A stretch of 64,000 nt of DNA from Octopus sinensis (taxonomy: Eukaryota): contig NC_043001.1 of NCBI RefSeq assembly GCF_006345805.1, positions 19,220,001-19,284,000 on the forward strand, read 5' to 3'. A model generated the notes under the pieces. That model made no database searches, had not been told where the DNA came from, and worked only from the letters and a program-made list of their open reading frames with translations. Numbering within the stretch: the first letter of the stretch is position 1; each line of letters opens with the position of its first letter. Shown in pieces: positions 12,513-34,173 of the stretch. A program made the position numbers and the translations under genes.

Positions 12513-12551
<39 letters not shown>

Positions 12552-13950: not shown

Positions 13951-14025
13951 ATTAAGGATAGGAAATATTAGATTTATAAGCTCTAAAATTTCACTCCATT
14001 GGTTAAGAGCGCGGGCTACTACCCC

Positions 14026-14082
<57 letters not shown>

Positions 14083-14084
<2 letters not shown>

Positions 14085-14553
14085 AAAAGCCAAAACAATA
14101 AAGTTTGCTTATTGATCGACATGAGCATCCCCTGTGATCATAATATCTCAGCGAAAGAGTTTGACAAGCTCAGAAAATATAAAGACCTACTCATTGAAAT
14201 TGAGAAAATGTGGCATCTCAAGGCGGTTACAATACCAGTGATCGTAGGAGCACTAGGAATGATCAAGAAGGGAACCGAAAATTATATGAGAATGATCCCT
14301 GGCTTACCATCCCTGCAAGAAGTGCAAAAGATTGTCTTAACTGGTACATCACACGTACTGAGAAGAGCATTGTCGATGTGAGAACTGTTGCTGCTCATGC
14401 ATTTTAATTTAACTTAAAAAAAAAAAGAAAGAAAATGAACGAACTACTGAGTTTGGTTTAATGGCCTACCAATGTATACTATGAGTTTCTTTGCCCTAGG
14501 AGTCGGGAAACACTCGGCAAGAAATGGAAGCAAATTTGAAAGAAGAAAAAAAA
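14083..14553 (+). mobile_element. R4/Dong-clade non-LTR retrotransposon 3' end (RLE domain) inserted in (TAA)n (paralog ~49275-49745)
   Basis: VCLLIDMSIPCDHNISAKEFDKLRKYKDL..EIEKMW..TIPVIVGALG; (TAA)n on both sides, which is the known Dong target. Confidence 0.85.
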
Positions 14554-14740
14554 TAATAATAATAATAATGATATGATATAATACAATAATAATAATAATA
14601 ATAATAATAATATAATAATAATAATAATAAATAATAATAATAATATAATGATAATAATAGTAATAATAATATAATAATAATGATAATGATAATATCGAAA
14701 AATACCTTAGGAATGAGAAGCTAGGTTTGAAATTTCCCAA

Positions 14741-14786
14741 GACACCTGATGAAGGCTGGAGGGTATATCAGCCGAAACGTTGTGTT
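14741..14786 (+). ncRNA. Minimal type I hammerhead ribozyme (paralog 50002-50047)
   Basis: GACAC-CTGATGA-AGGCTG-loop-CAGCC-GAAACGTT-GTGTT; intact core with palindromic stem III (AACGTT). Confidence 0.75.
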
Positions 14787-15429
14787 AACAACAAACAAGA
14801 TGAGGACAAATATCCGTCAAATGTAAATAATGAAAATGATGTAAATAAAGTCCATAAGTTATTGTTATTTGCCACAGCAGATGAAAGGTTTTCTGATGGT
14901 ATTGCCGAATAGTTATTAGGTTTGATTGTTTCTCTTCGGTGGCGAGCGGGAGAGCAGATTTGAGTTCATCAGGAAGGATTTAATTGAGAGAATAACATGA
15001 GACTAGCCATGACAGCCAGTCAGCAATCCATGTGTGTAACTAAGAGGTTACGGAGGAGATAGAAGAGACAGATGGAGGAAACAGCAAGTCTACTAACCTG
15101 AGATAGTGTGGACTATTTGCGGCGCGCCATACCGATCTGTGTGTGTTTTATTGTATGTTATTGTTGTTGTTAAGCAACAAGACGGGTAAGGGTGATTAGG
15201 TGATGGTCTAGGGCTTACGGACGGGAGATCCCAGACCTTGGAAAAAACAAACTTTGGTCGTCTTGTTGTAGTCCGACACCACTGGGAGGTGGCCCTCGAA
15301 GTCGCTGGAAATGGAGATCTCCAGGACCAAATTCTTGAACGACTATTGTATGTTATGTAGTACTGTCTAGTACAAAGTATTACTCTTCCACGTAAGAGTC
15401 AAAAGAAAGCTACAATTTTATTTTTTCAG

Positions 15430-15618
15430 ATTTTACCATTTGTAATGCGAAAAAGAAGCTTCCTTTCCAAATTGATCCATGCAATTGCGCGAAATATTAT
15501 AACGCTGGTACTTATATGGATTGTGGAGCTGGTACAATTGCGATAAATGGAGGCTGTGGACGTGATGATAAACCATGTCAGAGTAAACCTTGGCTTCGAT
15601 GCGGCATCAATATTCCAT
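15430..15618 (+). CDS. Receptor gene A, Cys-rich CBM14/peritrophin-A-like ectodomain exon (189 bp, phase 1-1)
   Basis: ttttttcag|AT TTT...CCA T|gtaagt. Reads FTICNAKKKLPFQIDPCNCAKYYNAGTYMDCGAGTIAINGGCGRDDKPCQSKPWLRCGINIP with no stop. Confidence 0.85.
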
Positions 15619-15770
15619 GTAAGTTATGCAATCTGTAACATTACATGAATTACACAACTACTTATTAATCCAATACTCAATCGTAAGTAACGCATGCGCA
15701 CACCACTATACACATAATTCTCTCTCTCTCTTTCTTCTCTCCCTCTCGCTCTCCTCTCTCTCTCTCTCTC

Positions 15771-15808
<38 letters not shown>

Positions 15809-15832
15809 GATAGATAGATAGATAAGATAGAT

Positions 15833-15876
<44 letters not shown>

Positions 15877-16157
15877 TGTATTATATATAATATAATTATT
15901 ATTTGAGGGAATAAAATCCAAACTTACAAGGAAAAAGAATTCAATTTAGAAATACTAAATCAAATTCCACACAATATAATATATATAAAATATTAGAAAA
16001 AAACACCTTTTATCAATTCAAAATGAATAATTAAATTACACCATCTAGAAAGTTACATATAATTGAAAAGTTAAAATTTAAAATAATTAAAATAACAATT
16101 AAAAAGTAAAAATTAAGTAAATTACAAGAATAATGTAATGTATATAATAGGTAGAAA

Positions 16158-16244
16158 AACGACACGCGTTTCGCTGCTATATTTAAGAAATGATTATAGT
16201 AGTAGAGAAATCACTTGCATATAAATATAGTCGCCCATCAGATT
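16158..16244 (-). ncRNA. Degenerate hammerhead in an AT-rich pLTR-like repeat (paralog 51435-51521)
   Basis: CTGATGG in A and CCGATGA in B (consensus CTGATGA), long stem II GCGACTATATTTA/TAAATATAGCAGC, then GAAACGCGTGTC. Confidence 0.45.
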
Positions 16245-16699
16245 AAGATATAATAGAACAGTAAAATAATAATTTAATAAATATACTTTAATATATACAT
16301 ATATATACACATATATATAAATATATATATGTATATGAAAATTCTAAATATATATAATTGAAAAATAAAATGATAATTCAATAATTAAATACTTTAAAAT
16401 TAAATAAAAAACACAAAGCTATAAAAAGTCATTAAATTGTAATCATAATAAGAAATGTTTCAAATATAGATAAATTCCTCACATAAGCTAACCATATAAT
16501 AAATATACATGTGTAGTATCTATGGATTTAATATTACAAACTATGACAAAATAGACTAAATATCAAATAATATAATACCTAATTAACTTCAATCTAGTAT
16601 TACAATTACATAATCCACCTATATATAATATATATATATATAATATATTATTGTCTCTACTAGAGCCTTAACTAAAGCTCTTTCTATTTTATTTCTAGT

Positions 16700-17460
16700 A
16701 CTAGTTAATTCCGTACCAAATCTGATTGACTCAAATTTAATGGCTCTTTTGAGGGCATACCACCATTTATTATTAATAATGGAACTGGTTAATGCCCATA
16801 CTATCTAGGTCAAATCTACAGGTCACAAATTTGGGATCACTGTTGTTGACAATATGATATTGTGGACAACTAACTATATTTTTACCATTAGTCCTAACAA
16901 TAATCCTGTCTAGATAAGATCTCGACGAACCATCGTTATTTTGCCCATATCCACAATGGAGCATCGGGTGATCCAGTCTGAATCGCTCTGTCAGCTGAAA
17001 ACGACTTAGCAAACCGCTAAGGCAAGGGATCTCCCCCAACCATCCGGGTTCGAGCCAACACGATCTACGCATGCATCGTAGAATGTGTTAAATTCACCTA
17101 ATAACACTAAAGTGTGGCGCGTTCCTTGAAAAATTCTCTAGGCTTCAAAAATAGTCAGACTGACCAGCTCACAGGGAACGTAGACAGCACCAAACTAAGG
17201 CCTTACCACTTTGTGTGTGTCACACTAAGGCGACCACCAACCTGCCCTCCGGACCTACAAAGATAGTCTTACCTCAAAATCCTGGTTTTTCCGAGTAGAA
17301 CTGCAACTCCTGTTTTTTAATATTCCTCCAAAGAGCTGAAGGACCTACACAATAAGTAGATGTAGGTGTTTTCAAATCAAAAACACCTCTCTCCTGTCAA
17401 GAGTCCCAGATGAACCACCTCGCTGCAAGTGGTGCAAATGAGGATAGTGACATCAAACTC
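16700..17460 (-). mobile_element. L1/Tx1-clade APE endonuclease fragment (paralog ~52090-52820)
   Basis: EGRLVVA, VLLIGEFN, LWVWANNDGSSRSYLDRIIV, SDHKFV (copy B) and WWYALKRAIK motifs. Confidence 0.75.
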
Positions 17461-17711
17461 CCTTATTCACCAAATGCCACATATTAGAGAAGGCCCTGAA
17501 TAAAAACAGCGTAGCAAAACAGCGGTGCCCCTGCATGACTGCAGCTCTGAGCTGAAACAACAAAAAAGCAAAAAAACATTTATATATATATATATATATA
17601 TAGGTGTATGTGTGTGTGCATGTGTGTGTGTGTGTATACACACACATATATATATACATATACATATATATACACATGTATATATATATATGCATAACAC
17701 ACATACACACA

Positions 17712-17761
<50 letters not shown>

Positions 17762-18169
17762 AATTATACATATAAATATATTATAAATTTAGAAATACTA
17801 ATTCAAATTTCACAAAATGTAATATATATATATAAATTAGAAAAAAAAACACCTTTTATCAATTCAATAATGAAAAATTAAATTATACCATTTAGAAAAA
17901 TAACATATTATAGAAAGATTAAATATAAGATAAAAAATATAACAATGATTACTTAATCATCGTAATATGTTTTATCTTTATTTTAATCTTTCTATAATAT
18001 GTTATTTTTCTAAATGAGTATAATTTAATTTTTCATTATTGAATTGATAAAAGGTGTTTTTATTTCTAATTTATGTGTATATATATATATATTATATATT
18101 ATATATATTTATATATATATATATTATATATATATTATTATATATATAATATATATATATATACATATA

Positions 18170-18253
<84 letters not shown>

Positions 18254-18301
18254 AATTAAATTGACAGAATAAGAGAAAAAATCATATTTCATGTCTTCTC
18301 T

Positions 18302-19857
18302 ATAAGTTTTTATCAAAGTTGTTTTATATTCTATAATTTTCACGGTCAATATATATTAATTGTTATTGTCTGAGATTTTGGTGTAATTTGAGAGGATAAT
18401 ACAAAAGTTATGGATGATTTAGTGATTTACTGCAAAGCCCATGGCGGCCAAAATTATCAGAACGGTGGCTTTTACTCCGTGTTTTAGTATATTTAACCGA
18501 TGAACTTTAATGTTTTGAATTTGTTTACGTGATGGTTCGTTTGCTAAACATTAGTAAGAATATCTGCAGTGTACTTTGTTAATATAATGCCACTTACTCC
18601 GTTACCAATTCGTCAGCATATTATTAAGCTTCGAAAGAAGGATAATTTAAGTATTGGGTCTATTGCAAAGATTGTTAACAAGTCAAAAAGTGTTGTTCAC
18701 GGTATTCTTAAGGTCTTCGATGATTGGGTAGGGGGTGAAGCAAAAAAGTCTACAGGTAGGCAAGAAAAACGACCAAGAGAGAAGATCGTGCTATGGTAAA
18801 GTTGGTTAAAAAGGACAGATTTAAAACTGCTGCTGCTGTTTCTCGGGAAATGAGCATTGTACTGAAGAAAACGTTATCTCGAAAATCTGTGCCTCATCGT
18901 TTAGTTGAACGTAACCTACAAGCAAGATCACCTGTAGTGAAGCCACTGATCAGCTCCAAAAATAAAAAGTGTCGTCTTACCTTTGCAACCGAACATGTGT
19001 TGTGGCCGCAAGAAAAATGGCAAACGGTGCATTTCAGTGATGAATCTAAGTTTATGTTATTTAACTCAGATGGGAAAGTAGGTGAAAAATTGTCGCCTAA
19101 ATGCCTTAAGACTAGTGTTAAATTCGGTGGAGGAAGTGTCATGGTTTGGGAGATGATATCTGGAGATGGTGTGGGCTCATTGGTGCGATAACACGGAAAG
19201 GTAAATGCAGGAGTTTATAAACAACTTCTAAAAGATCATGTCTTGCCTGTGCTGAGAAATTCAACTAAGCGACCACCCATATTCAAGCAGGACAATGCCC
19301 CGTGTCACAAGGCTAAGGTGGTCATGAACTTCCTCAAGGCTGAAAAGGTTATTATTATGGATTGGCCTACTGAAAGCCCAGATCTCAATCCTATTGAAAA
19401 TGTGTGGAATTTTCTAAGAGAACGTTCGAAAGCCAGAAATCCTAAAACAACCGAGCAATTATGGAATGCCCTTCAGGAAGAATGGAATAAGATCACCTAG
19501 CAAGAAATTGAAAATTTAATTTCCTCATGCAGTCAAAGATGTCAAAGTGTGATTGAAGCTAAAGGGCTTCACACTAAATATTAAATAATTCCAGTATTCT
19601 CTGTCATTTTTTATTATTTTGTAATTTTTTTAACCGTTCTGATCATTTTGGCCGCCATGGGTTTTGCAGTAAATCACTAAATCATCCATAACTTTTTTAT
19701 TATCCTCTCAAATTACACTAAAATCTCAGACAACAACAACTAATATTGTATTTATTGTCCGTGAAAATTATAGAACAGAAAATAACTTTGATAAAAACTT
19801 ATACCTACTTTTCTGGCGAAAACAATGCCGTTCTGAACATTTTGGTCGCGACTGTAT
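18302..19857 (+). mobile_element. Tc1 (DD34E) IR/DR-type transposon, left TIR truncated; found in copy A only
   Basis: Transposase 18587-19584 is frameshifted: HFSDESKF, KFGGGSVMVW, FKQDNAPCH, SPDLNPIENVW. The ~220-bp right TIR has two direct repeats and ends CTGTA-TA. Confidence 0.92.
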
Positions 19858-20439
19858 ATATTATATTTTGTGAAATTTGATTTAGTATTTCTAAATTGAA
19901 ATTTTCCCTGTAACTTTGGAATAATATTCCCTCATATTATATATATAGGTATATACACACACACATATATATATATGTATGTACGTATGTATGTGTGTGT
20001 GTGTGTATGTATGTATATGTATGTATATGTATGTATGTATGTATGTATGTATGCATGCATGTATGTATGTATGTATGTATGTATGTATGTATGTATGTAT
20101 GTATGTATGTATGTATGTATACAAGGTTAGTAGAGTTAGCGGTAGGAATAACCATCTAAGTGATAAGAATATCCCTTTTACTGCCGGTATAAATTACTTA
20201 TGTTATTTAATATGCTGCTTAATATATATAATGTTAATTTAAGGGTTAACATTTAACTGTAAATACGTTGCAACTGCTGCGACAATTATTAACTCGTAAC
20301 TGAACAGTGAATGTGTAAAATACGATGGTCTTAGTGTTATCACATTAGAATTAAAAGTGATAGAATAAAAGTGAAATAATATTATAGTTTTATCACAGGT
20401 AAGGAATAAAACTAATGTGATAAGACTATAATATTATAG

Positions 20440-20870
20440 TCTTATAACAGGTAGAAATAAAAGTAATAAAAGTCATTATTGTGAATTGTTAAAGAGATTC
20501 AAAAGCATACCGGTTTCGTGAATTTACTAATCATTACTTTGAATGCACACCGATTAATGAACGGTGCCTGGCCTACTAGTTCCTGAGTAAAACGATTATG
20601 TGTAAGAGAGGTAAGTTCTGGATTTGGTGCAATTAGGGTAGATATAGATCTGTAATGTGAATGGTGTATGGGATGTATGGGGGTTAGTGGTATTAATTGA
20701 AAGGTTAGTAGTGTTCTGTATTATGTCATGTGTTCACATTAAGTTGTGGAAGAAACATTGTTGATGAAAGTTGCCTCTTTATTCATTCTTTGTTGTACTG
20801 AGGTGTTCTGTGAACATTGATAAAGGGGGAAAATTAGGAAATTAGGATTAAGATTCCTAGCACACCTTTC
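20440..20870 (-). mobile_element. Penelope endonuclease C-terminus plus pLTR with a decayed hammerhead (20505-20546)
   Basis: CARNLNPNFLIFPLYQCSQNTSVQQRMNKEATFIN resembles the C-terminus of the 34694-35173 ORF; GCA..TTCAC-GAAACCGGTA-TGC. Confidence 0.65.
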
Positions 20871-21221
20871 TATGTGTTCACCTACCTGTATCTATCTAAC
20901 AAGTTGCTATTGCTATATATTATATTACCACAGCTATATCTACATTGGTGACAGGGTGCATTATTCTGATATTTTTTTAATAAAGCATACTTCTATATCA
21001 GTGCTTTTCAAACTTTTTGCTGGAGCGGAACCCCAAGGAAACATTCCACTGGCTCGAGGAACCCCTGTGCAATAATTTAAATAGTCTTATGAACACATAT
21101 CTGCACAGGAGAATTAAAAATTACTGCCGACTTTAGCAGTTTTGTAGCTTCTTGCGGATCCCCTGAACTGTACCGGCGGAACCCTGGTTGAAAACCACTG
21201 TTCTATATATTCCATAAACCG

Positions 21222-21400
21222 GCATGGCTGTGTGGTAAGTAGCTTGCTTACTAACCATATGGTTCCGGTTTCAGTCCCACTGTATGGCACCTTGGGCAAG
21301 TGTCTTCTACTATAGCCTCGGGCCAACCAAAGCCTTGTGAGTGGATTTGGTAGATGGAAACTGAAAGAAGCCTGTCATATATATGTGTGTGTGAGTGTGT
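21222..21400 (+). mobile_element. SINE family A head
   Basis: Matches the family-A consensus. Confidence 0.8.
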
Positions 21401-21414
21401 GTGTGTGCGTGTGT

Positions 21415-21455
<41 letters not shown>

Positions 21456-21475
21456 TGCGTGTGTGTGTGTGTATG

Positions 21476-21514
<39 letters not shown>

Positions 21515-21604
21515 AGATTCAGATGAATTTGGTATTTAAGTTGAGGCACCAGAATTTAGTACGGTATTATTCATACAATTTCAAAATAAGATTATTAAAA
21601 TCAA

Positions 21605-21978
21605 AATAAGCAACAAGGGTATCCAGATTTAATGCAGTACGATGGTTTCAAGCAACTCTATTTAATTGAACAATGCAATCATTACATCAATTTAAATGCT
21701 GAGCAATCTTCAGCTGCACAAAGACATAGAATTAAATTAAAACAGCTTAGAAGCTGAAGTGAAGACAGTATGTTCTTTGTCTATCTCCATACCTTCTTAG
21801 AGGTTTTAGTTAAAGTTATATTAATGTGTCCATCTGTTTTAATTTAATTTAATTCTATGTCTTTATGCAGCTGAAGATTGCTCTGCATTTAAATTGATGT
21901 AATGATTGCATTGTTTAATTAAATGGAGTTGCTTGAAACGATCGTACTGCATTACCTCTGGATATCTTTGTTGCTTAT
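21605..21978. repeat. Fold-back element with a hammerhead-like motif in each arm (21632-21719 minus, 21865-21952 plus)
   Basis: Arms of ~140 bp around a ~90-bp spacer. ATGCAG-CTGAAGA..GAAAC-GATC-GTA-CTGCAT; the base of stem II has U-U mismatches. Confidence 0.75.
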
Positions 21979-21982
21979 TTTG

Positions 21983-22028
<46 letters not shown>

Positions 22029-22260
22029 ATGTCCCCCCAACATAACTTGACATCCGATGTTAGTGTGTTTACAGGCCCGTAACTTAGAGGATCGGCAAAA
22101 GAGACCGATAGGATAAGTATTAGGCTTACAAAGAATAAGTCCTGGGGTCGATTTGTTCGACAAAAGGCGGTGCTCCTGCATGGCCACGGTCAGATGACTG
22201 GAACAAATAACGAATAAAAGAATACTAATTAGCCTCTATTTAATTTTTTTTTTCTCACAG

Positions 22261-22528
22261 TTAATGACACTCAATGCCGTGAGATCTGGCCCGAAGATTT
22301 TAAATTTTGGAAGTGGGATAAAATACAAACATTTTTAGATACCCATTCGGAAAAGGAGTCAACAACAACCACTACTCTAACACCAGAAACCACTACTCTA
22401 ACACCAGAAACCACTACTCTAACACCAGAAACCACTACTCTAACACTGGTTGCTTCTTTGGCCACTTTTTTGGTATTAGCGATCATATTTATTCTCTTCT
22501 TAATTTTATGGATATCATTTAGACGAAA
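22261..22528 (+). CDS. Receptor gene A, stalk plus transmembrane exon (268 bp, phase 1-2)
   Basis: ttttttttctcacag|TT AAT..CGA AA|gtaagt. Reads NDTQCREIWPEDFKFWKWDKIQTFLDTHSEKESTTTTTL(TPETTTL)3T-LVASLATFLVLAIIFILFLILWISF-RRK. Confidence 0.9.
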
Positions 22529-23379
22529 GTAAGTAAAGTTTCTGTTCCGACCCCTGTTGTACTCTTTCGCCCAAACTTTCTCTCAGTGTTTCTTCCTGTT
22601 TCTTGAGCAACGCTGCGATGGACTGGCGTCCCGTCCAGCGGGGCGAGGGGGGGACACACATACGCCATAGAAAGCGGGAAACCGGGCCCATCAGCCTGGC
22701 TAGGCTTGAAAAGGGCGAGTACAAAATACAAAGAAAATAACAGTATTAATAAAGATAATTTCTAACAGGGACACAGGGTAGAAATTTTAGGGCTGGATTA
22801 GAAGTGGATACAGTTGTTTAAGTAGAGTAAGATTTAGAGTCCCCAGAACAAAATAAATACAAACCATATCTCAGAGAGATTTGAATACAAAGCGTAAAGA
22901 AACGTAACTAAATTGTGTTGCTTTATTCGTTCAGTCAAAAAATCTATCTCTTATCCGTAATTCTTGTTTGAAGTTGTCTACTCCAGCAGTTTGCTGTTGG
23001 TTTACTCCAGAGACACAAGCATTATGAGTTAACAAAACACTCGTTAATTTACAGTACTTCTACTCTACAACAACCAATTTTAAAAAATCCATGAAAGCTA
23101 TTTATAGTGGACTGTAACCGCCAGAAGTAAGTGTTTTCGTTATAAATACCACACACATAACAACATAGGTGTTGCCAGCCTTTCGCCTAATAATCCCGTT
23201 GGGATCCTCATTCACACTGGTTTAATATTTAAAATATTTTTCTGAAAGAAGAACTGGGTGGTGTTTGGAATCTAAACGTAAATGAACGTACCTAAATCCC
23301 TCAAAATATGTTAGCCGATGCCTTACAGATCTTGTCGTTCACGTACCACTTAATGATATTTATTTGGTATTTCCTCCAG

Positions 23380-23473
23380 ACGAAACTCAACTCCAGATGA
23401 TAAATTCGCCAGTTCAAATGTTCAAAATGTAAATGAGAATAATCATCCGAATGAAGAAATCTATGAAAATACG
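23380..23473 (+). CDS. Receptor gene A, cytoplasmic exon 1 (94 bp, phase 2-0)
   Basis: tttcctccag|A CGA..ACG|gttagt. Reads RNSTPDDKFASSNVQNVNENNHPNEEIYENT. Confidence 0.8.
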
Positions 23474-24013
23474 GTTAGTACTTACTCTCTTCCTCTCTCT
23501 AATGTGTGTAAGACTCTATTATCTGTTTCAGGTGGCAGGGGTTAGTTTGAAGAACGTTTAGTTACCAAAATGACCAGACGGAACTTCACTTTAAACAATT
23601 GGCCTGTTTTATATTTCGTTTGGTGAGGTTTGTGTGAGATTGCCAGTGGTGGTATTGAATTTATTGTTGTTGTTGCTGTTCCAGGTCTGTCCAACTGGAG
23701 AAAATCTATAAACAAATGCATTCCAGTAGAGAACATCATATCTTTTGAAAGATAGTGCGTGTAAGACTCTATGATCTGTTTCAGGTGGTAGGGTGTAGTT
23801 TGAAGAACGTTTAGTTACCAAAATGATCAGACGGAACTTCACTTTAAACAATTGGCCCCTGTTTTATTACATCGAAAAAATAAAATACAATGTAGACTTA
23901 GGTGGGATTTGAACTCAAAACGTAAGGAGATATAACAAAATACTATAAGGTGACCGATTCTACCATCCACTCATTCACACGGGTTTATATATTTTATTTT
24001 TATTTCATTACAG

Positions 24014-24166
24014 ACAACTACTTCCTTCTGCAATAGTAGTATAGCGAATAAAAACACTTCAACAACAACAAACCCAAGAAACATCAGTGAGAAAACATAT
24101 GAAAACCTAGAAGAAGAGTCTTCTCCAAGATATGATAACTGGCGTTTAACGAACTGGAAATTGTGA
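24014..24166 (+). CDS. Receptor gene A, terminal exon with a broken ITAM
   Basis: tttcattacag|ACA. Reads TTTSFCNSSIANKNTSTTTNPRNISEKTYENLEEESSPRYDNWRLTNWKL*. Confidence 0.75.
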   Translation, partial: TTTSFCNSSIANKNTSTTTNPRNISEKTYENLEEESSPRYDNWRLTNWKL

Positions 24167-24389
24167 ACAATGAGAACAGAAATAACTCTTAATCACGTCG
24201 TTGAAAAATAAAATCTACTGGTGATAACGATACGTTTTATAACTTAATAATTAATCAAAATCTGTTACTAGTAACAATCTGTTACTGTTCGATAACCAAA
24301 ACCTATCGATAGATGATAACAATGTCTTGATGGTTTTCAATATAATATATCACGTGATACCATTATTGGAGTTATCTCACTTCCTTTTT

Positions 24390-25275
24390 GTTTTTAGATA
24401 TTAAAAATGTGAGATTTCTTCCCAGAAGACGGAGGAAATTGATTCCAACGTCAGATGAGACGAGCACCGATCTTCAGGAAAGAAATCTTATATTTGAAAT
24501 GTTGGCAGAAGGGAGATTAAAGATAGATTCCGACGATGAAATCTATTACAATTATTTTGGACCAGCAGCTAAGTTTACGTTGACATCATCTATAGACAGT
24601 GTTACGCCCTCTTCTTTGATGGGGCAGTATGAATTCTTTGTACGCCATCTCATAAGAACTGTTACCCCTCTGAGAATCTTGCTCCTATGTGTAGTGGCCT
24701 TTGTCTCTGGGACAATCTTGCATTATGAGCACGAATTCTTTGAATTTCATGTTGTCAGAAGTACCGAGACATTGAGGCCAATCTTATTTGATTATCTCTT
24801 TCTCAATTGATTTCCAGTCTGCTTTATAAAGATTGAAATTGGATAGTTTTTAGGTACTCCCCATAAGCCGATCGTCTTCGGATTTTTTTGGTTTATACTT
24901 GGTCAGCACTATTACATTTCATCCGGGACTAGCGTCGGTGTAACTTTCACGTTATGGACGAAATCCATATTGTTTGTGAAACAGAGATCAAGTCTACTAT
25001 CTGCCTGGTTGGTTAGAGTATTACTTGCTCTATGTTGGCGAGGCTGAGCAGGGATTTCCACCTGATTTTGAGTACATTGTGTCATTTCTGAGAGGAAAAG
25101 TTCCTCAGGTCATCATACGTTGGACAGGCTGAAGTCTCCCATAAGAAGTACACTGTTGTGTTGTTCTAGATTAGTTAAGATTTCTATTCTTCCAATACAG
25201 TCTTCGAATAGGTCCGTATGATTTGGAGCATCTAGTGGACGATAAGTGCTACATATAACGATATCGAGTTGTCAG
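24390..25275 (-). mobile_element. CR1/Jockey-type LINE APE endonuclease remnant (paralog ~59190-60060)
   Basis: CSTYRPL, VLLMGDFS, DSRLDLCFTNN and NFNLYKADWKSI motifs on the minus strand. Confidence 0.75.
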
Positions 25276-25282
25276 ACAGACA

Positions 25283-25333
<51 letters not shown>

Positions 25334-25667
25334 GCATACATATACATATATGTAAACGCACATATATATATACTTATATATATGTATCCACTTTCTTTTC
25401 TTTCCTTTCCTGAGCGTCCAATAACACTGTACTAATTCCACGTCCTCGCGTTGTTGTTTTTCCTTGCTTGTTCATGTTTGGATTGACTTAGCCGTCACTA
25501 GGCGGTTCGGCAAAAGAGAACGATATAATAAGTACTGGGCTTACAAAGAATAAGTCCCGGGGTCGAATTGCTCGATTAAAGGCGGTGCTGCAGCATGGCC
25601 GCAGTCAAATGACTGAAACAAGTAAAGGAGTTAAAAGAGTATCATATATGCATATACATATATATAA

Positions 25668-25718
<51 letters not shown>

Positions 25719-26026
25719 CATATATATATATGTATGTGTATAAGTGTGTGTGTGTGTGTATGTGTGTGTGTGTGTGTTGTGTGTGTGTGTGTGTGTGTTG
25801 TGTGTGTGTGTGTGTGTGTTTGTGTGTGTGTGTGACAACTCGATATCGTTATATTTCGAAGACTGCCTTGCAGGAATAGAAATCTTAACCAAACTAGAAC
25901 AATATAGGGAGAGTTCACGAAATAAACAAAAGACGGAGACAGGTGGTGTACAAAACAAACAGATATATTGGTATAATGCTCAGGAATTGAAAAAAAAGTC
26001 TTTTACGTTTTGAGCCTACGCTCTTC

Positions 26027-26098
<72 letters not shown>

Positions 26099-26099
26099 C

Positions 26100-26260
26100 G
26101 AAGTAGTGCCTGTGTGGTAAGTAGCTTGCTTACGAACCAAATGGTTCCGGGTACAGTCACACTGCTTGGCACCTTAGGTAAGTGTCTTCTACTATAGCCT
26201 TGGGCCGACCAAAGCCTTGTGAGTGGATTTGGTAGACGGAAACTGACAGAAGCCCGTCGC

Positions 26261-26295
<35 letters not shown>

Positions 26296-26548
26296 TGTAT
26301 GTATATATGTATGTTTGTATGTATGCGTGTATGTATGTGTGTGTGTCTATGATTGTGTGTCTGTGTGTGTCCCCCTAACATCGCTTGACAACCGATGCTG
26401 GTGTGTTTACGTTCCTGTAACTTAGCGATAGAATAAGTACTAGGTTTACAAAGAATAAGTCCTGGGATTGATTTGCTCAACTAAAGGCGATGCTCCAGCA
26501 TGGCCACATTCAAATGACTGAAACAAGTAAAAGAGTAACAGAGAGTAA

Positions 26549-26550
<2 letters not shown>
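26100..26550 (+). mobile_element. Full-length SINE family A (paralog 60525-61015)
   Basis: Head, internal (TATG)n tract and tail ending (AAAGAGT)n. Confidence 0.85.
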
Positions 26551-26597
<47 letters not shown>

Positions 26598-26601
<4 letters not shown>

Positions 26602-27243
26602 AAAAAAGGTTTGAAAATGCAATTTAAACGATGTTTATTTACTTAACCGGTTTCACTCTTTGGAAAAAGATTGTCAAAAGTAACATTAAAAGTATCATTG
26701 AATAATATGGGTTCAAAAATTTTTTTTACATAATTGTCACATTGAATATTATGCATTCAAAAAAGTTTTTTACATAATTGTAACATTGGATATTATGAAT
26801 TCAAAAATGTTTTTTTATACAAAATTGTCACATTACATGTATAAATATAGTGTTTGGTAACAGAGAAGTTCAATAGTATGATGAGAATATTTGGAAAAAT
26901 TGGCAGAAAAGGATAAAACAAATATATTATTGGAAATTTGGTTGCGTTAATTATTGGTTGTCGCAAATTGTCACATTACATGTATATATATATACAGCCT
27001 TTGGTATATATATACAATCTTTTGACAGCAAAAATTAAAATGGATTTTTTATACATCTCAGAATATTTTAAGTTGAAGGCGAGAATGTGTTGTTACTAAC
27101 CTGTTTGTTTTAGCAGAAAGGTTGAATTGAGAGAAAAAAGGTTGTACCCAGTGTGGTGTATACTCCCCTTCAAGCATCAATGGTTTTGGGGTTATCAGGA
27201 GGTTAGTATGCCTGCTGGTCAAGCAGCGTCTGTTTGTCACACA

Positions 27244-27277
<34 letters not shown>

Positions 27278-27463
27278 ACACACACACACACACACATAGT
27301 ATACAAACACACACCACATACACACAACACACACACACACACAGAACACACACACACACACAACGCACCCACATATATAATATATACACACAACACACAA
27401 ATATAACATGTATTTATATATAATATACACACACATATATATATATAACACACATAGACACAC

Positions 27464-27509
<46 letters not shown>

Positions 27510-28062
27510 TCCATACATAATATAAATATCACACAAATACACCTAGCATATATATACACATACAATATACAAATACAGCATGTATATAATACACATACAC
27601 AATATATGCATGCAATATACGTACGCAATACATACATATAATATATATATATATACAATGCATATACATATATACATGTATACATATAAATAGTGTTTAC
27701 ATACACATACATAGATATACCACATATACACACAATATACATACATACAATGCATACACATACACGTACGCATACATATAATATATATAAACACACACAC
27801 ACATAACATACATACACAATGCATACATATATATACACGCAATGCATATACATGTATTCATGCACATATGGCACACCTACAATATACATATATACAATGC
27901 ACACATACACACACATATATACACTTAATTGTACACATACATATACAATACACATACATACAATATACATATACACAATGCGCATGCAAATAATGCACAT
28001 GTTTATACACGCATAAACATGCAAATAAATATACACACACACATATACATACACATATATAT

Positions 28063-28103
<41 letters not shown>

Positions 28104-29483
28104 CATACATACATGCACATACATATATTTTTTCACACACATACACATACATATATATATAAAAAATTCACACACACACCCACACACACAAATTACAAAC
28201 CTATAGCGTACACACTCAAATATATCTCTACATACCGCACACACACACAAACAATGTACTCACATATACATACATACCATGCATATACACACACAACACT
28301 CACATATATATATATATATAAAAACAAATACACATGTAAATACATACACACGTATACAATGCTCACACACACACACACACACATACACACACACACGCAC
28401 ACAGTGCACACACACACACATATATATACACACGTGCACACACACACACACACAACGCGCGCACACACACACACATACACACACACGCACACAGTGCACA
28501 CACACACACACATATATATACACACGCGCATACACACACACAATGTGCACACACACACACACACACAACACTCACACACATACATAACCTACATATATAT
28601 AATGCATGCGTGTGTATTCCACGTATGTGTGCGGTCAATGCCCGCTAGTGTGTCCTATGCGTGCCGATGCGTGCATGTGCCCGCCCGCACGATATGCTGT
28701 GAGTGTGCGCGTGTCCCTGTGTGCTTGCTCTGGATGTTAGAGTATGTTTAGTTGTGGTCTGTATTTTTGAATAAGATTACTTTCCTTATTTATTCGTATT
28801 TGGTCTGTGGTGTTGTCCGAGCATTGGTATAGTGGGAAGACTAAGAATTTGGGGGACTTATTGTGTGCACAAAGGTCTAAGTGTCCACTTAGTGGTATCT
28901 GTCTTGTGGAGGGGTCCCTCAGTTGTTGTCGGTGAACTGTCATTCTTTCTCTGAGGGTAAGGCTCGTTTGCCCTATGTAGTCTTCGTGGTATCCTTCACA
29001 CCTTATGACGTAGAGTAAATTTTTTGATGCGCACGTGAAATTATTTTTTATGATGAATGTGTGTCCCGAGTGGAACTTGTACGACGATCCCTCAATGAGG
29101 TGGATGCAGGTCTTGCAGTTGGGGCGCCCACATTTTTTGATGGTGGGCGGTGGGTTTGTGTTGTGTAATTTTGCGTTGGTGAGGAGGTTTTTTAGGGATT
29201 TAGGTTGTCTCTTACTTTTTATTATTTTATGAGCTGCCAGTATTTTTTTCAGGCGTGGGTCTTGATTTAGTTGTGGAATGTTGTTGTATATAATAGTGTA
29301 AGCTTCTGCATTCCTTGGGTTGTGTGTTGAGAGATAGGGGAGGCTATTTACTGTACTGTGGATGTGTGTGTGCACGTGTGTATATATGTGTGTGTGTGTG
29401 TGCACTGTGTGCGTGTGTGTGTGTATGTGTGTGTGTGTGTGTGTGAGCATTGTATACGTGTGTATGTATTTACATGTGTATTT

Positions 29484-29528
<45 letters not shown>

Positions 29529-31203
29529 AGTGTTGTGTGTGTATATGCATGGTATGTATGTATATGTGAGTACATTGTTTGTGTGTGTGTGCGGTATGTA
29601 GAGATATATTTGAGTGTGTACGCTATAGGTTTGTAATTTGTGTGTGTGGGTGTGTGTGTGAATTTTTTATATATATATGTATGTGTATATGTGTGAAAAA
29701 ATATATGTATGTGCATGTATGTATGTATGTATATGTATATATATATATATATGTATGTATATATATATGTGTATGTATATGTGTGTGTGTGTATATTTAT
29801 TTGCATGTTTATGCGTGTATAAACATGTGCATTATTTGCATGCGCATTGTGTATATGTATATTGTATGTATGTGTATTGTATATGTATGTGTACAATTAA
29901 GTGTATATATGTGTGTGTATGTGTGCATTGTATATATGTATATTGTAGGTGTGCCATATGTGCATGAATACATGTATATGCATTGCGTGTATATATATGT
30001 ATGCATTGTGTATGTATGTTATGTGTGTGTGTGTTTATATATATTATATGTATGCGTACGTGTATGTGTATGCATTGTATGTATGTATATTGTGTGTATA
30101 TGTGGTATATCTATGTATGTGTATGTAAACACTATTTATATGTATACATGTATATATGTATATGCATTGTCTATATATATATATATTATATGTATGTATT
30201 GCGTATGTATATTGCATGCATATATTGTGTATGTGTATTATATACATGCTGTATTTGTATATTGTATGTGTATATATATGCTAGGTGTATTTGTGTGATA
30301 TTTATATTATGTATGGATGTGTGCGTGTGTTGTGTGTGTGTGTGTGTGTGTGTGTTGTGTGTCTATGTGTTATATATATATGTGTGTGTATATTATATAT
30401 AAATACATGTTATATTTGTGTGTTGTGTGTATATATTATATATGTGGGTGCGTTGTGTGTGTGTGTGTTCTGTGTGTGTGTGTGTGTTGTGTGTATGTGG
30501 TGTGTGTTTGTATACTATGTGTGTGTGTGTGTTGTTGTGTGTGTGTGTGTATATGTGTGTGACAAACAGACGCTGCTTGACCAGCAGGCATACTAACCTC
30601 CTGATAACCCCAAAACCATTGATGCTTGAAGGGGAGTATACACCACACTGGGTACAACCTTTTTTCTCTCAATTCAACCTTTCTGCTAAAACAAACAGGT
30701 TAGTAACAACACATTCTCGCCTTCAACTTAAAATATTCTGAGATGTATAAAAAATCCATTTTAATTTTTGCTGTCAAAAGATTGTATATATATACCAAAG
30801 GCTGTATATATATACATGTAATGTGACAATTTGCGACAACCAATAATGAACGCAACCAAATTTCCAATAATATATTTGTTTTATCCTTTTCTGCCAATTT
30901 TTCCAAATATTCTCATCACACTATTGAACTTCTCTGTTACCAAACACTATATTTATACATGTAATGTGACAATTTTGTATAAAAAAACATTTTTGAATTC
31001 ATAATATCCAATGTAACAATTATGTAAAAAAACTTTTTTGAATGCATAATATTCAATGTGACAATTATGTAAAAAAATTTTTTGAACCCATATTATTCAA
31101 TGATACTTTTAATGTTACTTTTGACAATCTTTTACCAAAGAGTGAAACCGGTTAAGTAAATAAACATCGTTAAAATTACATTTTCAAACCTTTTTTCTTA
31201 TAT
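26598..31203 (-). mobile_element. 5'-truncated Penelope (GIY-YIG, 28737-29360) inside ~1.85-kb inverted repeats
   Basis: KKCGRPNCKTC..KNLLYVIRC..YIGQT..RERMTVHR. Arm 26598-~28445 is the reverse complement of ~29362-31203. Confidence 0.9.
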
Positions 31204-31233
31204 AATCCCACTCGTGCGATACCCCCAACTCAA

Positions 31234-31289
<56 letters not shown>

Positions 31290-31299
<10 letters not shown>

Positions 31300-31675
31300 T
31301 AATCCAAACAAGAGAGCACAAAAACACAACAACGCGAGGACGTGGAACAAATGTAGAATTATTGGGCGCTCAGAAAAGAAGGAAAGAAGGAGGGTTTAAC
31401 GTTTCGAGCGGAGCTCTTCGTCGGAAACATAGGTGAAGGAAAGATCCAGAGAAGGGAAGACAGAGGAAACAAAATCGCCGCGGTCAAATTTCGTTGGCGA
31501 TTTTCTTTCTGTCTTCCCATCTTTGGACTTTTTCTATATAATTCTGATGAAGAGCTCCGCTCGAAACGTGAAATCCACTTTCTTTTCTTTCCTTTCCTGG
31601 GCGTCCAATAACACTGTACTGATTCCACGTCCTCACGTTGTTGTTTTTTCTTGCTTGTTCATGTTTGGTTTGACT
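31290..31675. repeat. Head-to-head pair of short hammerhead-bearing repeats (related copies at 2071-2290, 2715-2925, 25385-25490)
   Basis: CTGATGA-AGAGCTCCGCTC-GAAACGT at 31544-31569 (+) and a CCGACGA variant at ~31394-31428 (-). Confidence 0.7.
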
Positions 31676-31804
31676 TAGCCGTACAACTTAAAATAAGTTG
31701 AATAAAATCAAGATAAGCAACAGGACATCCGGGGGTGATGCAGTATAACCACTTCAAACGGTCGCACTGCATCACTTCTGAATATCCTGTTGCTTATTTT
31801 CATC

Positions 31805-31857
<53 letters not shown>

Positions 31858-31870
<13 letters not shown>

Positions 31871-32213
31871 TTAGAGACAAAACCACTATTATGCAAATCA
31901 AACGAAGAAAGACTTAATCCAATACATAAAATTTTTTATATAAATTAAATAAAATTAAGTTATCCACTACAATTGTTTCTTGTCACTTCTAAGGACATTC
32001 ATCAGGTGGTTTCAAGACCTTCTATTCAATTTTAAATTGAAATTGAATAGAAGGTCTTGAAACCACTTGATGAATGTCCTTAGAAGTGACAAGAAACAAT
32101 TGTATTGGATAACTTAATTTTATTTAATTTATATAAAAAATTTTATGTATTGGATTAAGTCTTTCTTTGTTTGATTTGCATAATAGTGGTTTTGTCTCTA
32201 ATTAATATTATAT
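31858..32213. repeat. Near-perfect ~355-bp palindrome with a hammerhead in each arm
   Basis: Centre ~32035. The minus arm (31963-32010) reads CCAC-CTGATGA-ATGTC..GACAA-GAAAC-AATT-GTA-GTGG; the plus arm (32062-32109) carries C3U and a stem I change. Confidence 0.88.
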
Positions 32214-32291
32214 AATATTTTACTATAAAATTGGATTCAATCCTAAATCTGATTTTTCCCTGTAAATTTGGATTTATTCACTAATATTTAT

Positions 32292-32330
<39 letters not shown>

Positions 32331-32334
<4 letters not shown>

Positions 32335-32763
32335 ACTTATAAACAAGGGCAAAAGAAAAAAGTTCTAATGCCAAATATGCCGAAAATAGACAAATTGTAA
32401 ATAACCATATAATTTAACACTATAAACACGCATCTCGAAGTAAGCCGACAGAAATTTCTAAAAAATTCCGTTATTATCGTATCGGTCCCAATTTCAGAGT
32501 TAATTCATAAGAATTTTATCCTTGTCAGCGATAAATACGTAAGACATAAATGAAATACTTACTCATACCCATGGAAGAAGCAAGCGCTAAGTCATGAGCA
32601 GACCTAAGTACCCCAAATATATCCAAAATAGAAAATCTCTGTCGGCTTACTTCCAGATGCGTGTTTATAGTATTAAATTATATAGTTATTGACAATATGT
32701 CTATTTTCGGCATATTTGGCGTTAGAAGTTTTTTTTTTATTTTGCCCGTATTTATAAATTTAA
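32331..32763. mobile_element. MITE with ~130-bp TIRs (paralog 63597->64000)
   Basis: 32331-32460 is the reverse complement of ~32630-32763. Confidence 0.85.
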
Positions 32764-32824
32764 CTTTTAAAGGTATTTGTTAATATGCTGGTCATTGATA
32801 AAAAATTTTTCGATAAATTTTATC

Positions 32825-32945
<121 letters not shown>

Positions 32946-32967
32946 TATATATATATATGTGTGTATA

Positions 32968-33290
32968 TATCTATATATATAAAACTGAGAATGTGTGTCT
33001 GTCTGTCTATCTGTATGAATCCCTAAAATTTGAGAACTACACAACCAATTGCATTCAAATTTTACACATGCCTTACTTAGGGTCCATGCCTTCTTGCCTA
33101 GGGCGAGCCCACAGAAATATCATATCCTCTCCACTATTTCAGTATTACGTGTTAAAAGTGAAACAAAAACATCTCTCTAGTGTAATGTCAGATACTTTCA
33201 CTTTAATAAAGAAACTATTAAATTCAAATTATTATATAAGAGGGATGAACCATTAACAGTGAACATCCATTTTGCTAGAAGAAGATCCGC
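32968..33290 (-). mobile_element. Helitron-like non-autonomous element
   Basis: Begins ATCTATATATATAAAACTGAGAATGTGTGTCTGTC, the reverse complement of a HINE-type terminus. Confidence 0.45.
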
Positions 33291-33985: not shown

Positions 33986-34054
33986 AGGCAGTATCTCATA
34001 TTTTGTTTGCCCACACAATTTATCTTTGTGTGTGTGTGTGTATACATACACACA

Positions 34055-34173
<119 letters not shown>

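What the first reader, a model, noticed from the sequence alone, without database searches (positions are those of the whole stretch)
22547..24210. The cytoplasmic-tail module is a low-identity island with sharp edges, suggesting a tail swap
Seen: A and B are near-identical through the TM exon and 18 bp into the intron. They then align only loosely (roughly 80% by eye; A ~22897-24210 vs B ~56235-59000, with different TE content), and return to near-identity (~97% by eye) immediately after the B stop codon. Established: paired receptor families (KIR, Ly49, SIRP, Siglec) gain different signalling outputs through conversion and recombination. Inference: one tail came from an older third paralog, or everything except the tail is being homogenised.
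Basis: partly seen in the sequence, partly recalled or inferred. Interest (0 to 1): 0.72.

Follow-up and report, generated by a model that had tools for sequence, protein, structure and literature searches.

The report
Octopus gene pair with swapped tail
Two neighbouring copies of an uncharacterised octopus membrane-protein gene are about 97% alike except for a 1.7-kb stretch encoding the intracellular tail, most likely because one copy's tail was overwritten by that of another family member; this is a clean but mechanistically ordinary gene conversion.

Summary
The window is Octopus sinensis chromosome DNA carrying a ~32-kb tandem duplication. Each unit holds one small single-pass membrane-protein gene: A (LOC115211618 isoform X3) and B (isoform X1).

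A and B are 97.2% identical over 11,323 aligned bases. Inside A 22547-24209 they are only 84.5% identical (Fisher p 1e-61). An unsupervised max-chi2 scan picks 22545-24217.

The island covers the two tail exons and their introns. In it, A is 95.6-97% identical to two other paralogs, C and D (LOC115211668 and LOC115211728), and shares a derived intron structure with them. B groups with the O. bimaculoides ortholog of the A/B backbone. Segment trees switch with 100% bootstrap on both sides.

Both breakpoints lie in sequence that is nearly invariant in all paralogs: 22468-22547 (3' half of the TM exon plus 18 intron bases) and 24209-24433 (3'UTR after the ancestral stop).

Best reading: a 1.7-2.0 kb ectopic gene conversion gave A a gene-1-type tail, before the sinensis/vulgaris split and after the bimaculoides split.

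The paired-receptor analogy is not established. The TM segments are identical and there is no ITIM. The family tails carry YEEI plus an ITAM-like motif, and A has since lost both.

Novelty: a new example of a known process.

The parts
6586..38502 (+). Tandem duplication unit A (about 32 kb), containing gene A
   Evidence: Colinear blastn blocks against 38503-64000, and 63591-64000 = 32325-32732. The O. vulgaris locus L003 is colinear with it.
38503..64000 (+). Tandem duplication unit B, which runs off the window end, containing gene B
9974..9983 (+). Gene A exon 1 (ATGGGAAACG, donor GTAAAT)
   Evidence: The spliced model is the same sequence as XP_029636091.1, isoform X3.
15430..15618 (+). Gene A exon 2, Cys-rich N-terminal (presumed extracellular) domain
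   Evidence: tblastn, splice sites.
22261..22528 (+). Gene A exon 3: end of the ectodomain, Thr-rich stalk with a 21-bp repeat, TM helix, RRK
22468..22547 (+). Left breakpoint interval of the converted tract: a stretch nearly invariant in all paralogs (3' half of the TM exon plus 18 intron bases)
   Evidence: The last sites where A=B but differ from C=D are 22466/22467. From 22548 A follows C/D and B follows Obi1.
22547..24208 (+). Minimal converted tract in A: the T-type tail cassette (intron 3, exon 4, intron 4, exon 5)
   Evidence: 142 sites with A=C=D differing from B, against 10 with A=B differing from C=D. A is 95.6-97% identical to C/D and 80.6-86.8% to B, with bootstrap 100%.
22548..22860 (+). 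Intron segment shared only by A, Av, C, Cv, D and Dv. B and O. bimaculoides gene 1 have a different sequence here.
23380..23473 (+). Gene A exon 4 (tail; family YEEID is changed to NEEIY)
24014..24166 (+). Gene A exon 5 (tail). A 1-nt deletion in the A-run at 24137-24138 shifts the frame, removes the distal YDKL and ends the protein at TGA 24164-24166.
24209..24433 (+). Right breakpoint interval: starts at the ancestral stop codon (TAA 24209-24211) and runs through 3'UTR that is nearly invariant in all paralogs
   Evidence: The last cluster of C/D-like sites ends at about 24208. The first site with A=B differing from C=D is 24433.
24212..24542 (+). 3' block conserved in A, B, C, D and Obi1. 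Homology to C/D stops at 24542.
41028..41037 (+). Gene B exon 1 (ATGGGAAAAG)
   Evidence: The model is the same sequence as XP_029636088.1, isoform X1.
50712..50900 (+). Gene B exon 2
54247..54472 (+). Gene B exon 3 (stalk plus TM)
54491..58998 (+). Gene B M-type tail module (introns with extra inserts; exon 4 at 57172-57265; exon 5 at 58795-58998). It is colinear with O. bimaculoides gene 2.
115..12465 (+). Upstream arm U (promoter region plus exon 1). It is repeated in inverted orientation upstream of paralog C, about 12 kb away.
   Evidence: 97.7% over 5.5 kb to L004 and 96.2% to L006.

Best explanation
Gene A is a mosaic. It arose with B by tandem duplication of the gene-2 lineage unit. 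That unit carries the DFTICN-type ectodomain, the common TM exon and an M-type tail, as in B and in O. bimaculoides gene 2.

A patch of 1.66-1.97 kb, covering the whole cytoplasmic-tail cassette (intron 3, exon 4, intron 4, exon 5), was then overwritten. The process was non-reciprocal homologous recombination (ectopic gene conversion, or an equivalent double crossover). The template was a gene-1 lineage paralog: the ancestor of C and D, which lie 30-100 kb away in the same cluster, with C in inverted orientation.

The exchange resolved in the only two stretches that are nearly identical in every family member: the 3' half of the TM exon with its splice donor, and the 3'UTR directly after the stop codon. 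That explains why the island has sharp edges that coincide with functional boundaries.

The event happened after the split from O. bimaculoides and before the O. sinensis / O. vulgaris split.

Since then A's tail has changed further. It lost the YEEI site and the distal half of an ITAM-like YxxL-x7-YxxL motif, and all its remaining tyrosines sit in YxN context.

Shown: the mosaic structure, its boundaries, the donor lineage, the relative timing and the motif changes. Inferred: the recombination mechanism, the membrane topology and any signalling consequence.
For: 1. Island statistics: 84.5% against 97.2% identity, p 1e-61. Max-chi2 returns 22545-24217.

2. Similarity profile of A against B, C, D and the orthologs. 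C and D match A only in 22423-24542, at 94-98%. B matches at 95-100% on both sides and at 81-90% inside.

3. NJ trees with 200 bootstraps:
- TM segment: {A,Av,B,Bv} 100%.
- tail1 and tail2: {B,Bv,Obi2} 100%, with A and Av joining C, Cv, D and Dv.
- 3' block 24211-24542: {A,Av,B,Bv} 100%.

4. Quartet informative sites: 142 to 10 inside the island against 7 to 15 in the flanks, p 2e-10.

5. A shares the derived intron segment 22548-22860 only with C and D and their O. vulgaris orthologs. B keeps the intron start seen in O. bimaculoides gene 1.

6. B is colinear with O. bimaculoides gene 2 from the upstream region through the ectodomain exon, the introns and the M-type tail exons. The M-type tail is therefore ancestral for this backbone.

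7. The same mosaic is present in the independent O. vulgaris assembly, with L003 colinear at about 98%. It is also present in the RefSeq protein X3, which is the same sequence as my gene model. It is therefore not an assembly artefact.

8. C and D keep T-type tails and no gene-1-type gene with an M-type tail was found in the cluster. This is consistent with non-reciprocal transfer.

9. The cluster order D(+), C(-), A(+), B(+), and the inverted upstream arms shared by A and C at 97.7%, show that these loci exchange or share sequence.
Against: - A's tail is sister to the C/D clade (bootstrap 93-96%), not nested within it. Its distance to C and D (3-4.4%) is not smaller than the A-B backbone distance (about 2.8%). 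The order 'duplication, then conversion' is therefore not proven. A single complex event, or later homogenisation of the backbone, is possible.
- A also has a C-like upstream arm, so its history involves more than one exchange.
- Only four paralogs per species, and two in O. bimaculoides, were sampled. An unsampled donor could exist.
- The TM exon of O. bimaculoides gene 2 lies in an assembly gap.
- Trees are NJ on short segments. No formal GENECONV, RDP or ML analysis was run.
Confidence: 0.78

Rival explanations
1. Backbone homogenisation. A is an old gene-1-type (T-tail) copy. Everything except its tail, meaning at least 16 kb upstream and at least 14 kb downstream, has been homogenised with B by concerted evolution. 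Under this reading the tail is the only original part.
For: - The region around ectodomain exon 2 does show within-species clustering: (A,B) 100% and (Av,Bv) 100%.
- A shares its far-upstream arm with C at 97-100%.
- The A-to-C/D tail distance is not smaller than the A-to-B backbone distance.
Against: - This needs conversion of about 30 kb of a 32-kb unit, including TE-rich non-coding DNA that has no counterpart at C or D. The alternative is a single patch of under 2 kb.
- Outside the ectodomain exon the backbone groups by orthology (A-Av 98-100%, above A-B), so it is not being homogenised at present.
- The A/B units are a simple tandem repeat with one period.
Confidence: 0.1
2. One-step chimeric duplication. 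The tandem duplication that created A was itself a template-switching replication event (of the FoSTeS/MMBIR kind). It copied the tail cassette from a gene-1 paralog while copying the rest from the gene-2 unit.
For: The A-B backbone divergence (about 2.8%) and the A-to-C/D tail divergence (3-4.4%) are of similar size. The cluster contains inverted and direct repeats.
Against: Both junctions lie in 80-220 bp of near-perfect homology. That is typical of homologous recombination rather than microhomology-mediated switching. There are no junction insertions or microhomology scars.
Confidence: 0.1
3. In-place rapid divergence of the tail, by positive selection or relaxed constraint, with no transfer.
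For: Tail exons of A compared with C/D give dN about 0.05-0.08 and dS about 0.03-0.05, which shows weak constraint.
Against: The introns are as divergent as the exons. A's tail, introns included, is 96-97% identical to C and D.
Confidence: 0.01
4. Assembly chimera that joins reads of different paralogs.
For: The region is repeat-rich and holds several paralogs of 95-98% identity.
Against: The same mosaic, with the same A-specific substitutions, is present in an independent O. vulgaris chromosome assembly. The gene model is the same sequence as RefSeq isoform X3.
Confidence: 0.01

Closest known systems
Siglec-11 / Siglec-16 and Siglec-5 / Siglec-14 paired receptors in primates (PMC5701461, abstract seen; Siglec-5/14 from my own knowledge)
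   Same: Linked paralogs show mosaic similarity created by gene conversion with sharp boundaries. The extracellular-domain region is homogenised within species while the signalling ends stay different. Here too the region around ectodomain exon 2 clusters by species, and the tails belong to different lineages.
   Different: In Siglecs the converted part is the ectodomain and the partners have opposite outputs: an ITIM tail against a charged TM residue that recruits DAP12. Here the converted patch is the tail itself, the TM segments are identical and uncharged, and both tail types carry similar motifs. The proteins are not Ig-superfamily members and have no known ligand.
CEACAM and KLRC (NKG2) paired opposing receptors (PMC2832619, PMC3210942, PMC7042247; abstracts seen)
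   Same: Tandem multigene families in which gene conversion and recombination shuffle exon blocks, so that ligand-binding and signalling modules have different phylogenies.
   Different: Those are vertebrate immune receptors with defined ITIM/ITAM logic. The octopus family is an orphan with no Pfam domain and no expression or functional data.
KIR2DS4, a product of gene conversion with KIR3DL2 (PMC2768862)
   Same: A bounded conversion tract from a third family member creates a new combination of modules in one gene of a cluster.
   Different: The KIR tract changed ligand specificity in the ectodomain. Here the tract replaces the cytoplasmic tail.
ITAM-bearing receptors such as Drosophila Draper or vertebrate Fc-receptor gamma chain / CD3 chains (my own knowledge)
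   Same: The tails of B, C, D and Obi1 contain YxxL-x7-YxxL preceded by acidic residues, and a YEEI site, which is the preferred Src-family SH2 ligand.
   Different: This is a motif-level resemblance only. There is no evidence of phosphorylation or of Syk/Shark binding. A lacks the motif.

Membership tests
Ectopic (interlocus) gene-conversion tract | A bounded segment whose phylogeny conflicts with that of both flanks | tested here: met
   Segment trees switch from {A,B} to {A,C,D} and back to {A,B}, each with 100% bootstrap. Informative sites are 142:10 inside against 7:15 in the flanks.
Ectopic (interlocus) gene-conversion tract | Non-reciprocal: the donor lineage keeps its own copy and no reciprocal product exists | tested here: met
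   C, D, Cv and Dv all keep T-type tails. No gene-1-type gene with an M-type tail was found among the family members recovered. This is limited to the sampled cluster.
Ectopic (interlocus) gene-conversion tract | Breakpoints in stretches of high donor-recipient identity | tested here: met
   Left interval 22468-22547 and right interval 24209-24433 are nearly invariant in all paralogs.
Ectopic (interlocus) gene-conversion tract | Distinguishable from a double crossover or a replication template switch | not testable with these tools
   The end product is the same sequence under all three. Intermediates or population data would be needed.
Paired (activating/inhibitory) receptors | Linked genes with closely similar ectodomains | tested here: inconclusive
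   The ectodomain part of A and B is about 85% identical in protein. Exon 2 has 9 of 63 codons changed and the ectodomain part of exon 3 has 5 of 32. The topology is only inferred: there is no signal peptide in the models.
Paired (activating/inhibitory) receptors | One partner with an ITIM/ITSM tail | tested here: not met
   No [SIVL]xYxx[IVL] or TxYxx[VI] motif occurs in any tail of A, B, C, D or Obi1/2.
Paired (activating/inhibitory) receptors | The other partner with a short tail and a charged TM residue that recruits an ITAM adaptor | tested here: not met
   The TM segments of A and B are identical and uncharged (27 codons, 0 differences). Both tails are 82-99 residues long.
ITAM-bearing receptors | YxxL/I-x6-12-YxxL/I in the cytoplasmic tail | tested here: met
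   Present in B (YEVLEEKSSPQYNKL), C, D and Obi1. Absent from A (frameshift), Av (premature stop) and Obi2 (YEDQ).
ITAM-bearing receptors | Tyrosine phosphorylation and binding of a tandem-SH2 kinase (Syk/ZAP-70/Shark) | not testable with these tools
   Needs biochemistry.
Chitin-binding peritrophin-A (CBM_14) domain proteins | Pfam PF01607 match above the gathering score | tested here: not met
   The only match is a sub-threshold one in a distant relative (P0012: 13.7 bits against a cut-off of 22.1, E 0.071). None occurs in A, B, C or D.

The most novel reading that the evidence does not exclude
The four-gene cluster is a cephalopod-specific surface-receptor family with ITAM-like tails that evolves the way vertebrate paired immune receptors do. 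The ectodomains of A and B are kept in step within each species by conversion while accumulating only amino-acid-changing differences. Whole tail cassettes are exchanged between paralogs. One partner (A) has had its YEEI site and the distal ITAM tyrosine dismantled, and the distal truncation arose independently in two species. The result would be a pair with an intact and a crippled signalling tail on similar ectodomains.
Probability: 0.15. Interest if true: 0.7.

Novelty: new member of a known kind. Interest (0 to 1): 0.4.

Why it matters
This is a very clean, fully bounded example of module exchange in a lineage-restricted invertebrate gene family. A complete cytoplasmic-tail cassette moved between paralogs using the conserved TM exon and 3'UTR as homology arms. 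It shows that the mix-and-match evolution known from vertebrate immune receptor clusters also operates in cephalopods.

It also defines a small orphan family with a Cys-rich N-terminal domain, a mucin-like stalk, a TM helix, and a tail carrying YEEI plus an ITAM-like motif. The tail variants are ready-made natural experiments for asking what these proteins signal.

There are practical consequences for annotation. RefSeq merges A and B into one gene. The O. bimaculoides 'isoform X1' looks like a product of an assembly gap.

The mechanism itself is well known, so the finding is useful but not surprising.

Tried and rejected
I used family proteins instead. Nothing reached threshold.
- AlphaFold2 on the 10-sequence family alignment gave pLDDT 42, with only the TM helix confident. 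I ran no fold search because the matches would be meaningless.
- A tRNA/SINE check of 22000-25000 with ARAGORN found nothing.
- Exact-product look-ups of P0006 and P0001 failed because they are not the recorded isoforms. P0017 worked and gave the record range from which I inferred the window's approximate genomic coordinates.
- I searched the window for hidden alternative tail cassettes, for example an M-type cassette behind A or a T-type cassette behind B. tblastn found none.
- I first read the two O. bimaculoides isoforms (same ectodomain and TM, different tails) as evidence for alternative tail exons within one gene. I rejected this because the TM exon of gene 2 falls in an N gap (L001 44968-46285) and isoform X1 bridges two genes.
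- I considered that window 1-8400 and the L004 flank might be the same locus. I rejected this because their record coordinates are about 10 kb apart and in opposite orientation, so they are inverted repeat arms.
- The ORF at 24358-24807 has no Pfam match, and homology to C/D ends in the middle of it. I treat it as non-coding 3' sequence.
- A literature search found nothing on this octopus family.

Full report
**What the window is**

The DNA is eukaryotic: 36% G+C, rich in microsatellites and transposon fragments. A protein search with the TM-exon and tail translation found only 'uncharacterized' Octopus proteins.

My spliced models have canonical GT-AG sites. They are the same sequences as O. 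sinensis LOC115211618 isoform X3 (gene A, 237 aa) and isoform X1 (gene B, 240 aa). The exact-product look-up places that gene at CM016863.1 19219974-19288998, so the window is about 19.220-19.284 Mb.

The window holds a tandem duplication with a period of about 32 kb: unit A is 6586-38502 and unit B runs from 38503 to beyond the end.

Exons are:
- Gene A: 9974-9983, 15430-15618, 22261-22528, 23380-23473, 24014-24166.
- Gene B: 41028-41037, 50712-50900, 54247-54472, 57172-57265, 58795-58998.

**Checking the observation**

A and B are identical through the TM-coding half of exon 3 and for exactly 18 intron bases. The first difference is A 22547.

From there B cannot be aligned until A 22861. The alignable blocks then run at 84.4% (22861-23279), 91.4% (around tail exon 1) and 79-82% (over the last exon). 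From A 24208 / B 58995 identity is again 96-100%.

Over the whole unit the backbone is 97.2% identical (11,323 ungapped columns) against 84.5% in the island (1,120 columns), Fisher p = 1.3e-61. A two-breakpoint max-chi2 scan without prior information returns 22545-24217.

**What the island is**

I fetched the family's other loci:
- O. vulgaris A' (L003) and B' (L002).
- O. sinensis paralogs C (LOC115211668, L004) and D (LOC115211728, L005), and their O. vulgaris orthologs (L006, L007).
- The O. bimaculoides locus with gene 1 and gene 2 (L001).

A similarity profile of A against all of them shows a mosaic:
- C and D match A only in 22423-24542, at 94-98%.
- B matches A at 95-100% on both sides of the island and at 81-90% inside it.

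Neighbour-joining trees with 200 bootstraps make the same point:
- TM segment: {A,Av,B,Bv} 100%.
- Both tail segments: {B,Bv,Obi2} 100%, with A and Av joining C, Cv, D and Dv. A is 95.6-97% identical to C/D and 80.6-86.8% to B.
- 3' block 24211-24542: {A,Av,B,Bv} 100% again.

Quartet informative sites are 142 (A=C=D, differing from B) to 10 (A=B, differing from C=D) in the island, and 7 to 15 in the flanks, p = 2e-10.

A also shares with C and D, and with nothing else, a derived intron segment at 22548-22860. B keeps the intron start that O. bimaculoides gene 1 also has.

**Direction and timing**

O. bimaculoides gene 2 is colinear with B along its whole length. This covers the upstream region, the DFTICN-type ectodomain exon, the intron before the TM exon, B-specific intron pieces, the M-type tail exons and the 3' block. 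Its TM exon is hidden in an assembly gap at L001 44968-46285.

The M-type tail is therefore the ancestral partner of this backbone, and A is the copy that changed.

The same mosaic, with the same A-specific substitutions, is in O. vulgaris A' (98-99.6% identical to A across the junctions). The event therefore predates the sinensis/vulgaris split.

The A/C/D-specific intron structure is absent from O. bimaculoides gene 1, which places the event after that split.

A's tail is sister to the C/D clade (bootstrap 93-96%). At two codons it keeps the state seen in O. bimaculoides, where C and D share a derived state. The donor was therefore the C/D ancestor, or C and D have homogenised each other since.

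**Breakpoints and mechanism**

The left exchange point lies in 22468-22547 and the right one in 24209-24433. The tract is therefore 1.66-1.97 kb long.

Both intervals are nearly invariant in every paralog and species. The first holds the TM helix, RRK and the splice donor. The second begins at the ancestral stop codon (TAA 24209-24211, equivalent to B 58996-58998) and runs into a 3'UTR block. That block is 93-97% conserved even between the two lineages, whose tails are only 80-87% alike.

This is the expected geometry of homologous, non-reciprocal exchange. The tail cassette is flanked by two built-in homology arms. The sharp left edge is sharpened further because the donor lineage has a structural change that starts at intron base 19.

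The cluster order is D(+), C(-), A(+), B(+), spanning 19.13-19.28 Mb. A and C are head to head about 30 kb apart. They share inverted upstream arms of about 12 kb that include the promoter region and exon 1. These are 97.7% identical over 5.5 kb, with kilobase stretches at 100%. Sequence exchange or sharing between these loci is therefore evident independently of the tail.

I cannot separate gene conversion from a double crossover or from a one-step chimeric duplication.

**What the genes are and what the swap changed**

No Pfam family reaches threshold. AlphaFold2 is confident only for the TM helix. An exhaustive profile search finds only the Octopus family and four weak hits. Of the three I retrieved, two (P0012, P0015) have the same layout and a conserved YEE[IV] site. 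One of them gives a sub-threshold hit to the chitin-binding peritrophin-A domain, which is a hint only.

The layout is as follows:
- a basic N-terminus with no signal peptide in the models;
- a Cys-rich domain of about 95 residues;
- a Thr-rich stalk;
- a TM helix followed by RRKR;
- a tail of 82-99 residues.

I infer that the tail is cytoplasmic from the positive-inside rule.

The family tail carries YEEI (the preferred Src-family SH2 ligand, from my own knowledge) and an ITAM-like YxxL-x7-YxxL motif. Examples are C with YEVLEEESSPRYDKL and B with YEVLEEKSSPQYNKL. Both tail types have these motifs, so the swap itself exchanged like for like apart from B's extra YVN and a different C-terminus.

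The larger changes came afterwards, in the A lineage:
- YEEID became NEEIY.
- YEAL/YEVL became YENL.
- The distal YDKL was lost. In O. sinensis this happened by a 1-nt deletion at 24137-24138. In O. vulgaris it happened independently, by a stop codon right after YENL.

A's three remaining tyrosines are all in YxN context. Tail dN is about equal to or above dS between A and C/D. That fits either relaxed constraint or re-tuning.

**Comparison with known systems**

The pattern resembles vertebrate paired-receptor clusters (Siglec-11/16, CEACAM, KLRC, KIR), in which conversion gives the ligand-binding and signalling modules different histories.

Membership in that class is not supported. There is no ITIM or ITSM, no charged TM residue and no short-tailed partner.

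One real parallel exists. The region around ectodomain exon 2 clusters by species: (A,B) 100% and (Av,Bv) 100%. All 11 A/B differences in that exon are scored as non-synonymous (dS 0, 9 codons changed).

**Verdict**

The mechanism is ordinary. The case is a new, very clean member of a known kind, in an unstudied cephalopod gene family.

Noticed in passing
window 15430-15618 vs 50712-50900 (ectodomain exon 2 of A and B); segment 15250-15750: All 11 nucleotide differences in this exon are scored as non-synonymous (dN 0.077, dS 0, 9 of 63 codons changed), while the flanking introns differ by 2-5%. The segment clusters by species, (A,B) and (Av,Bv), each with 100% bootstrap. This suggests within-species conversion plus diversifying selection on the ectodomain.
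   Followed up: partly
window 115-12465 vs L004 2147-13585 and L006 2157-13458: The promoter-proximal region and exon 1 of A are repeated in inverted orientation upstream of paralog C. The arms are about 12 kb with a spacer of 12.4 kb or less. Identity is 97.7% over 5.5 kb, with kilobase stretches at 100%. This palindrome-like structure is present in both O. sinensis and O. vulgaris.
   Followed up: partly
window 24137-24138; L003 about 18700: The distal tail of the A lineage is truncated independently in two species. O. sinensis has a 1-nt deletion giving RYDNWRLTNWKL*. O. vulgaris has a stop codon directly after YENL. Both remove the second YxxL of the ITAM-like motif.
   Followed up: partly
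L001 44968-46285 (O. bimaculoides): The TM exon of O. bimaculoides gene 2 falls in a run of N. RefSeq isoform X1 of LOC106874494 joins the TM exon of gene 1 to the tail exons of gene 2 across about 32 kb. This is probably an annotation artefact of the gap.
   Followed up: yes
window 9974-9983 and 41028-41037: RefSeq merges A and B into one gene, LOC115211618. Isoform X2 starts MGN (A's exon 1, AAC) but continues with B's exons 2-5, whereas B's own exon 1 encodes MGK. It is either a read-through transcript from A's promoter or a model artefact.
   Followed up: no
window 22361-22444 vs 54346-54390: The stalk contains a 21-bp repeat (TLTPETT) present about three and a half times in A and collapsed in B. 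RefSeq isoform X4 has yet another stalk version (..TLTPETTITLV..) that neither copy in this window encodes.
   Followed up: no
window 17560-22002 vs 52900-53981: B lacks about 3.4 kb of intron 2 that A, O. vulgaris A' and O. vulgaris B' all have. The region includes a Tc1/mariner transposase fragment at 18548-19497. This is therefore a deletion specific to O. sinensis B.
   Followed up: partly
window 53769-53949 and 55969-56149: A 181-bp direct repeat (97.8%) brackets B's TM exon. O. bimaculoides has only the downstream copy (L001 46397-46575).
   Followed up: no
window 61116-63598: Tandem array of a repeat of about 600 bp at 99% identity, in the B unit. The corresponding part of the A unit (about 27000-31000) is a long, degenerate microsatellite-like tract.
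   Followed up: no
window 24212-24542 and 58999-59329: The 3'UTR block directly after the stop codon is conserved far better than the tail region upstream of it. It is 93-97% identical between lineages whose tail segments are 80-87% alike, and 90-93% identical to O. bimaculoides gene 1. This suggests a conserved regulatory element. An ORF overlapping it (24358-24807) has no Pfam match.
   Followed up: partly
P0012, P0015 (distant relatives found by the profile search): Two proteins of about 280 aa have the same layout and a conserved YEE[IV] site. P0012 gives a sub-threshold match to the chitin-binding peritrophin-A domain (CBM_14, 13.7 bits against a cut-off of 22.1).
   Followed up: partly
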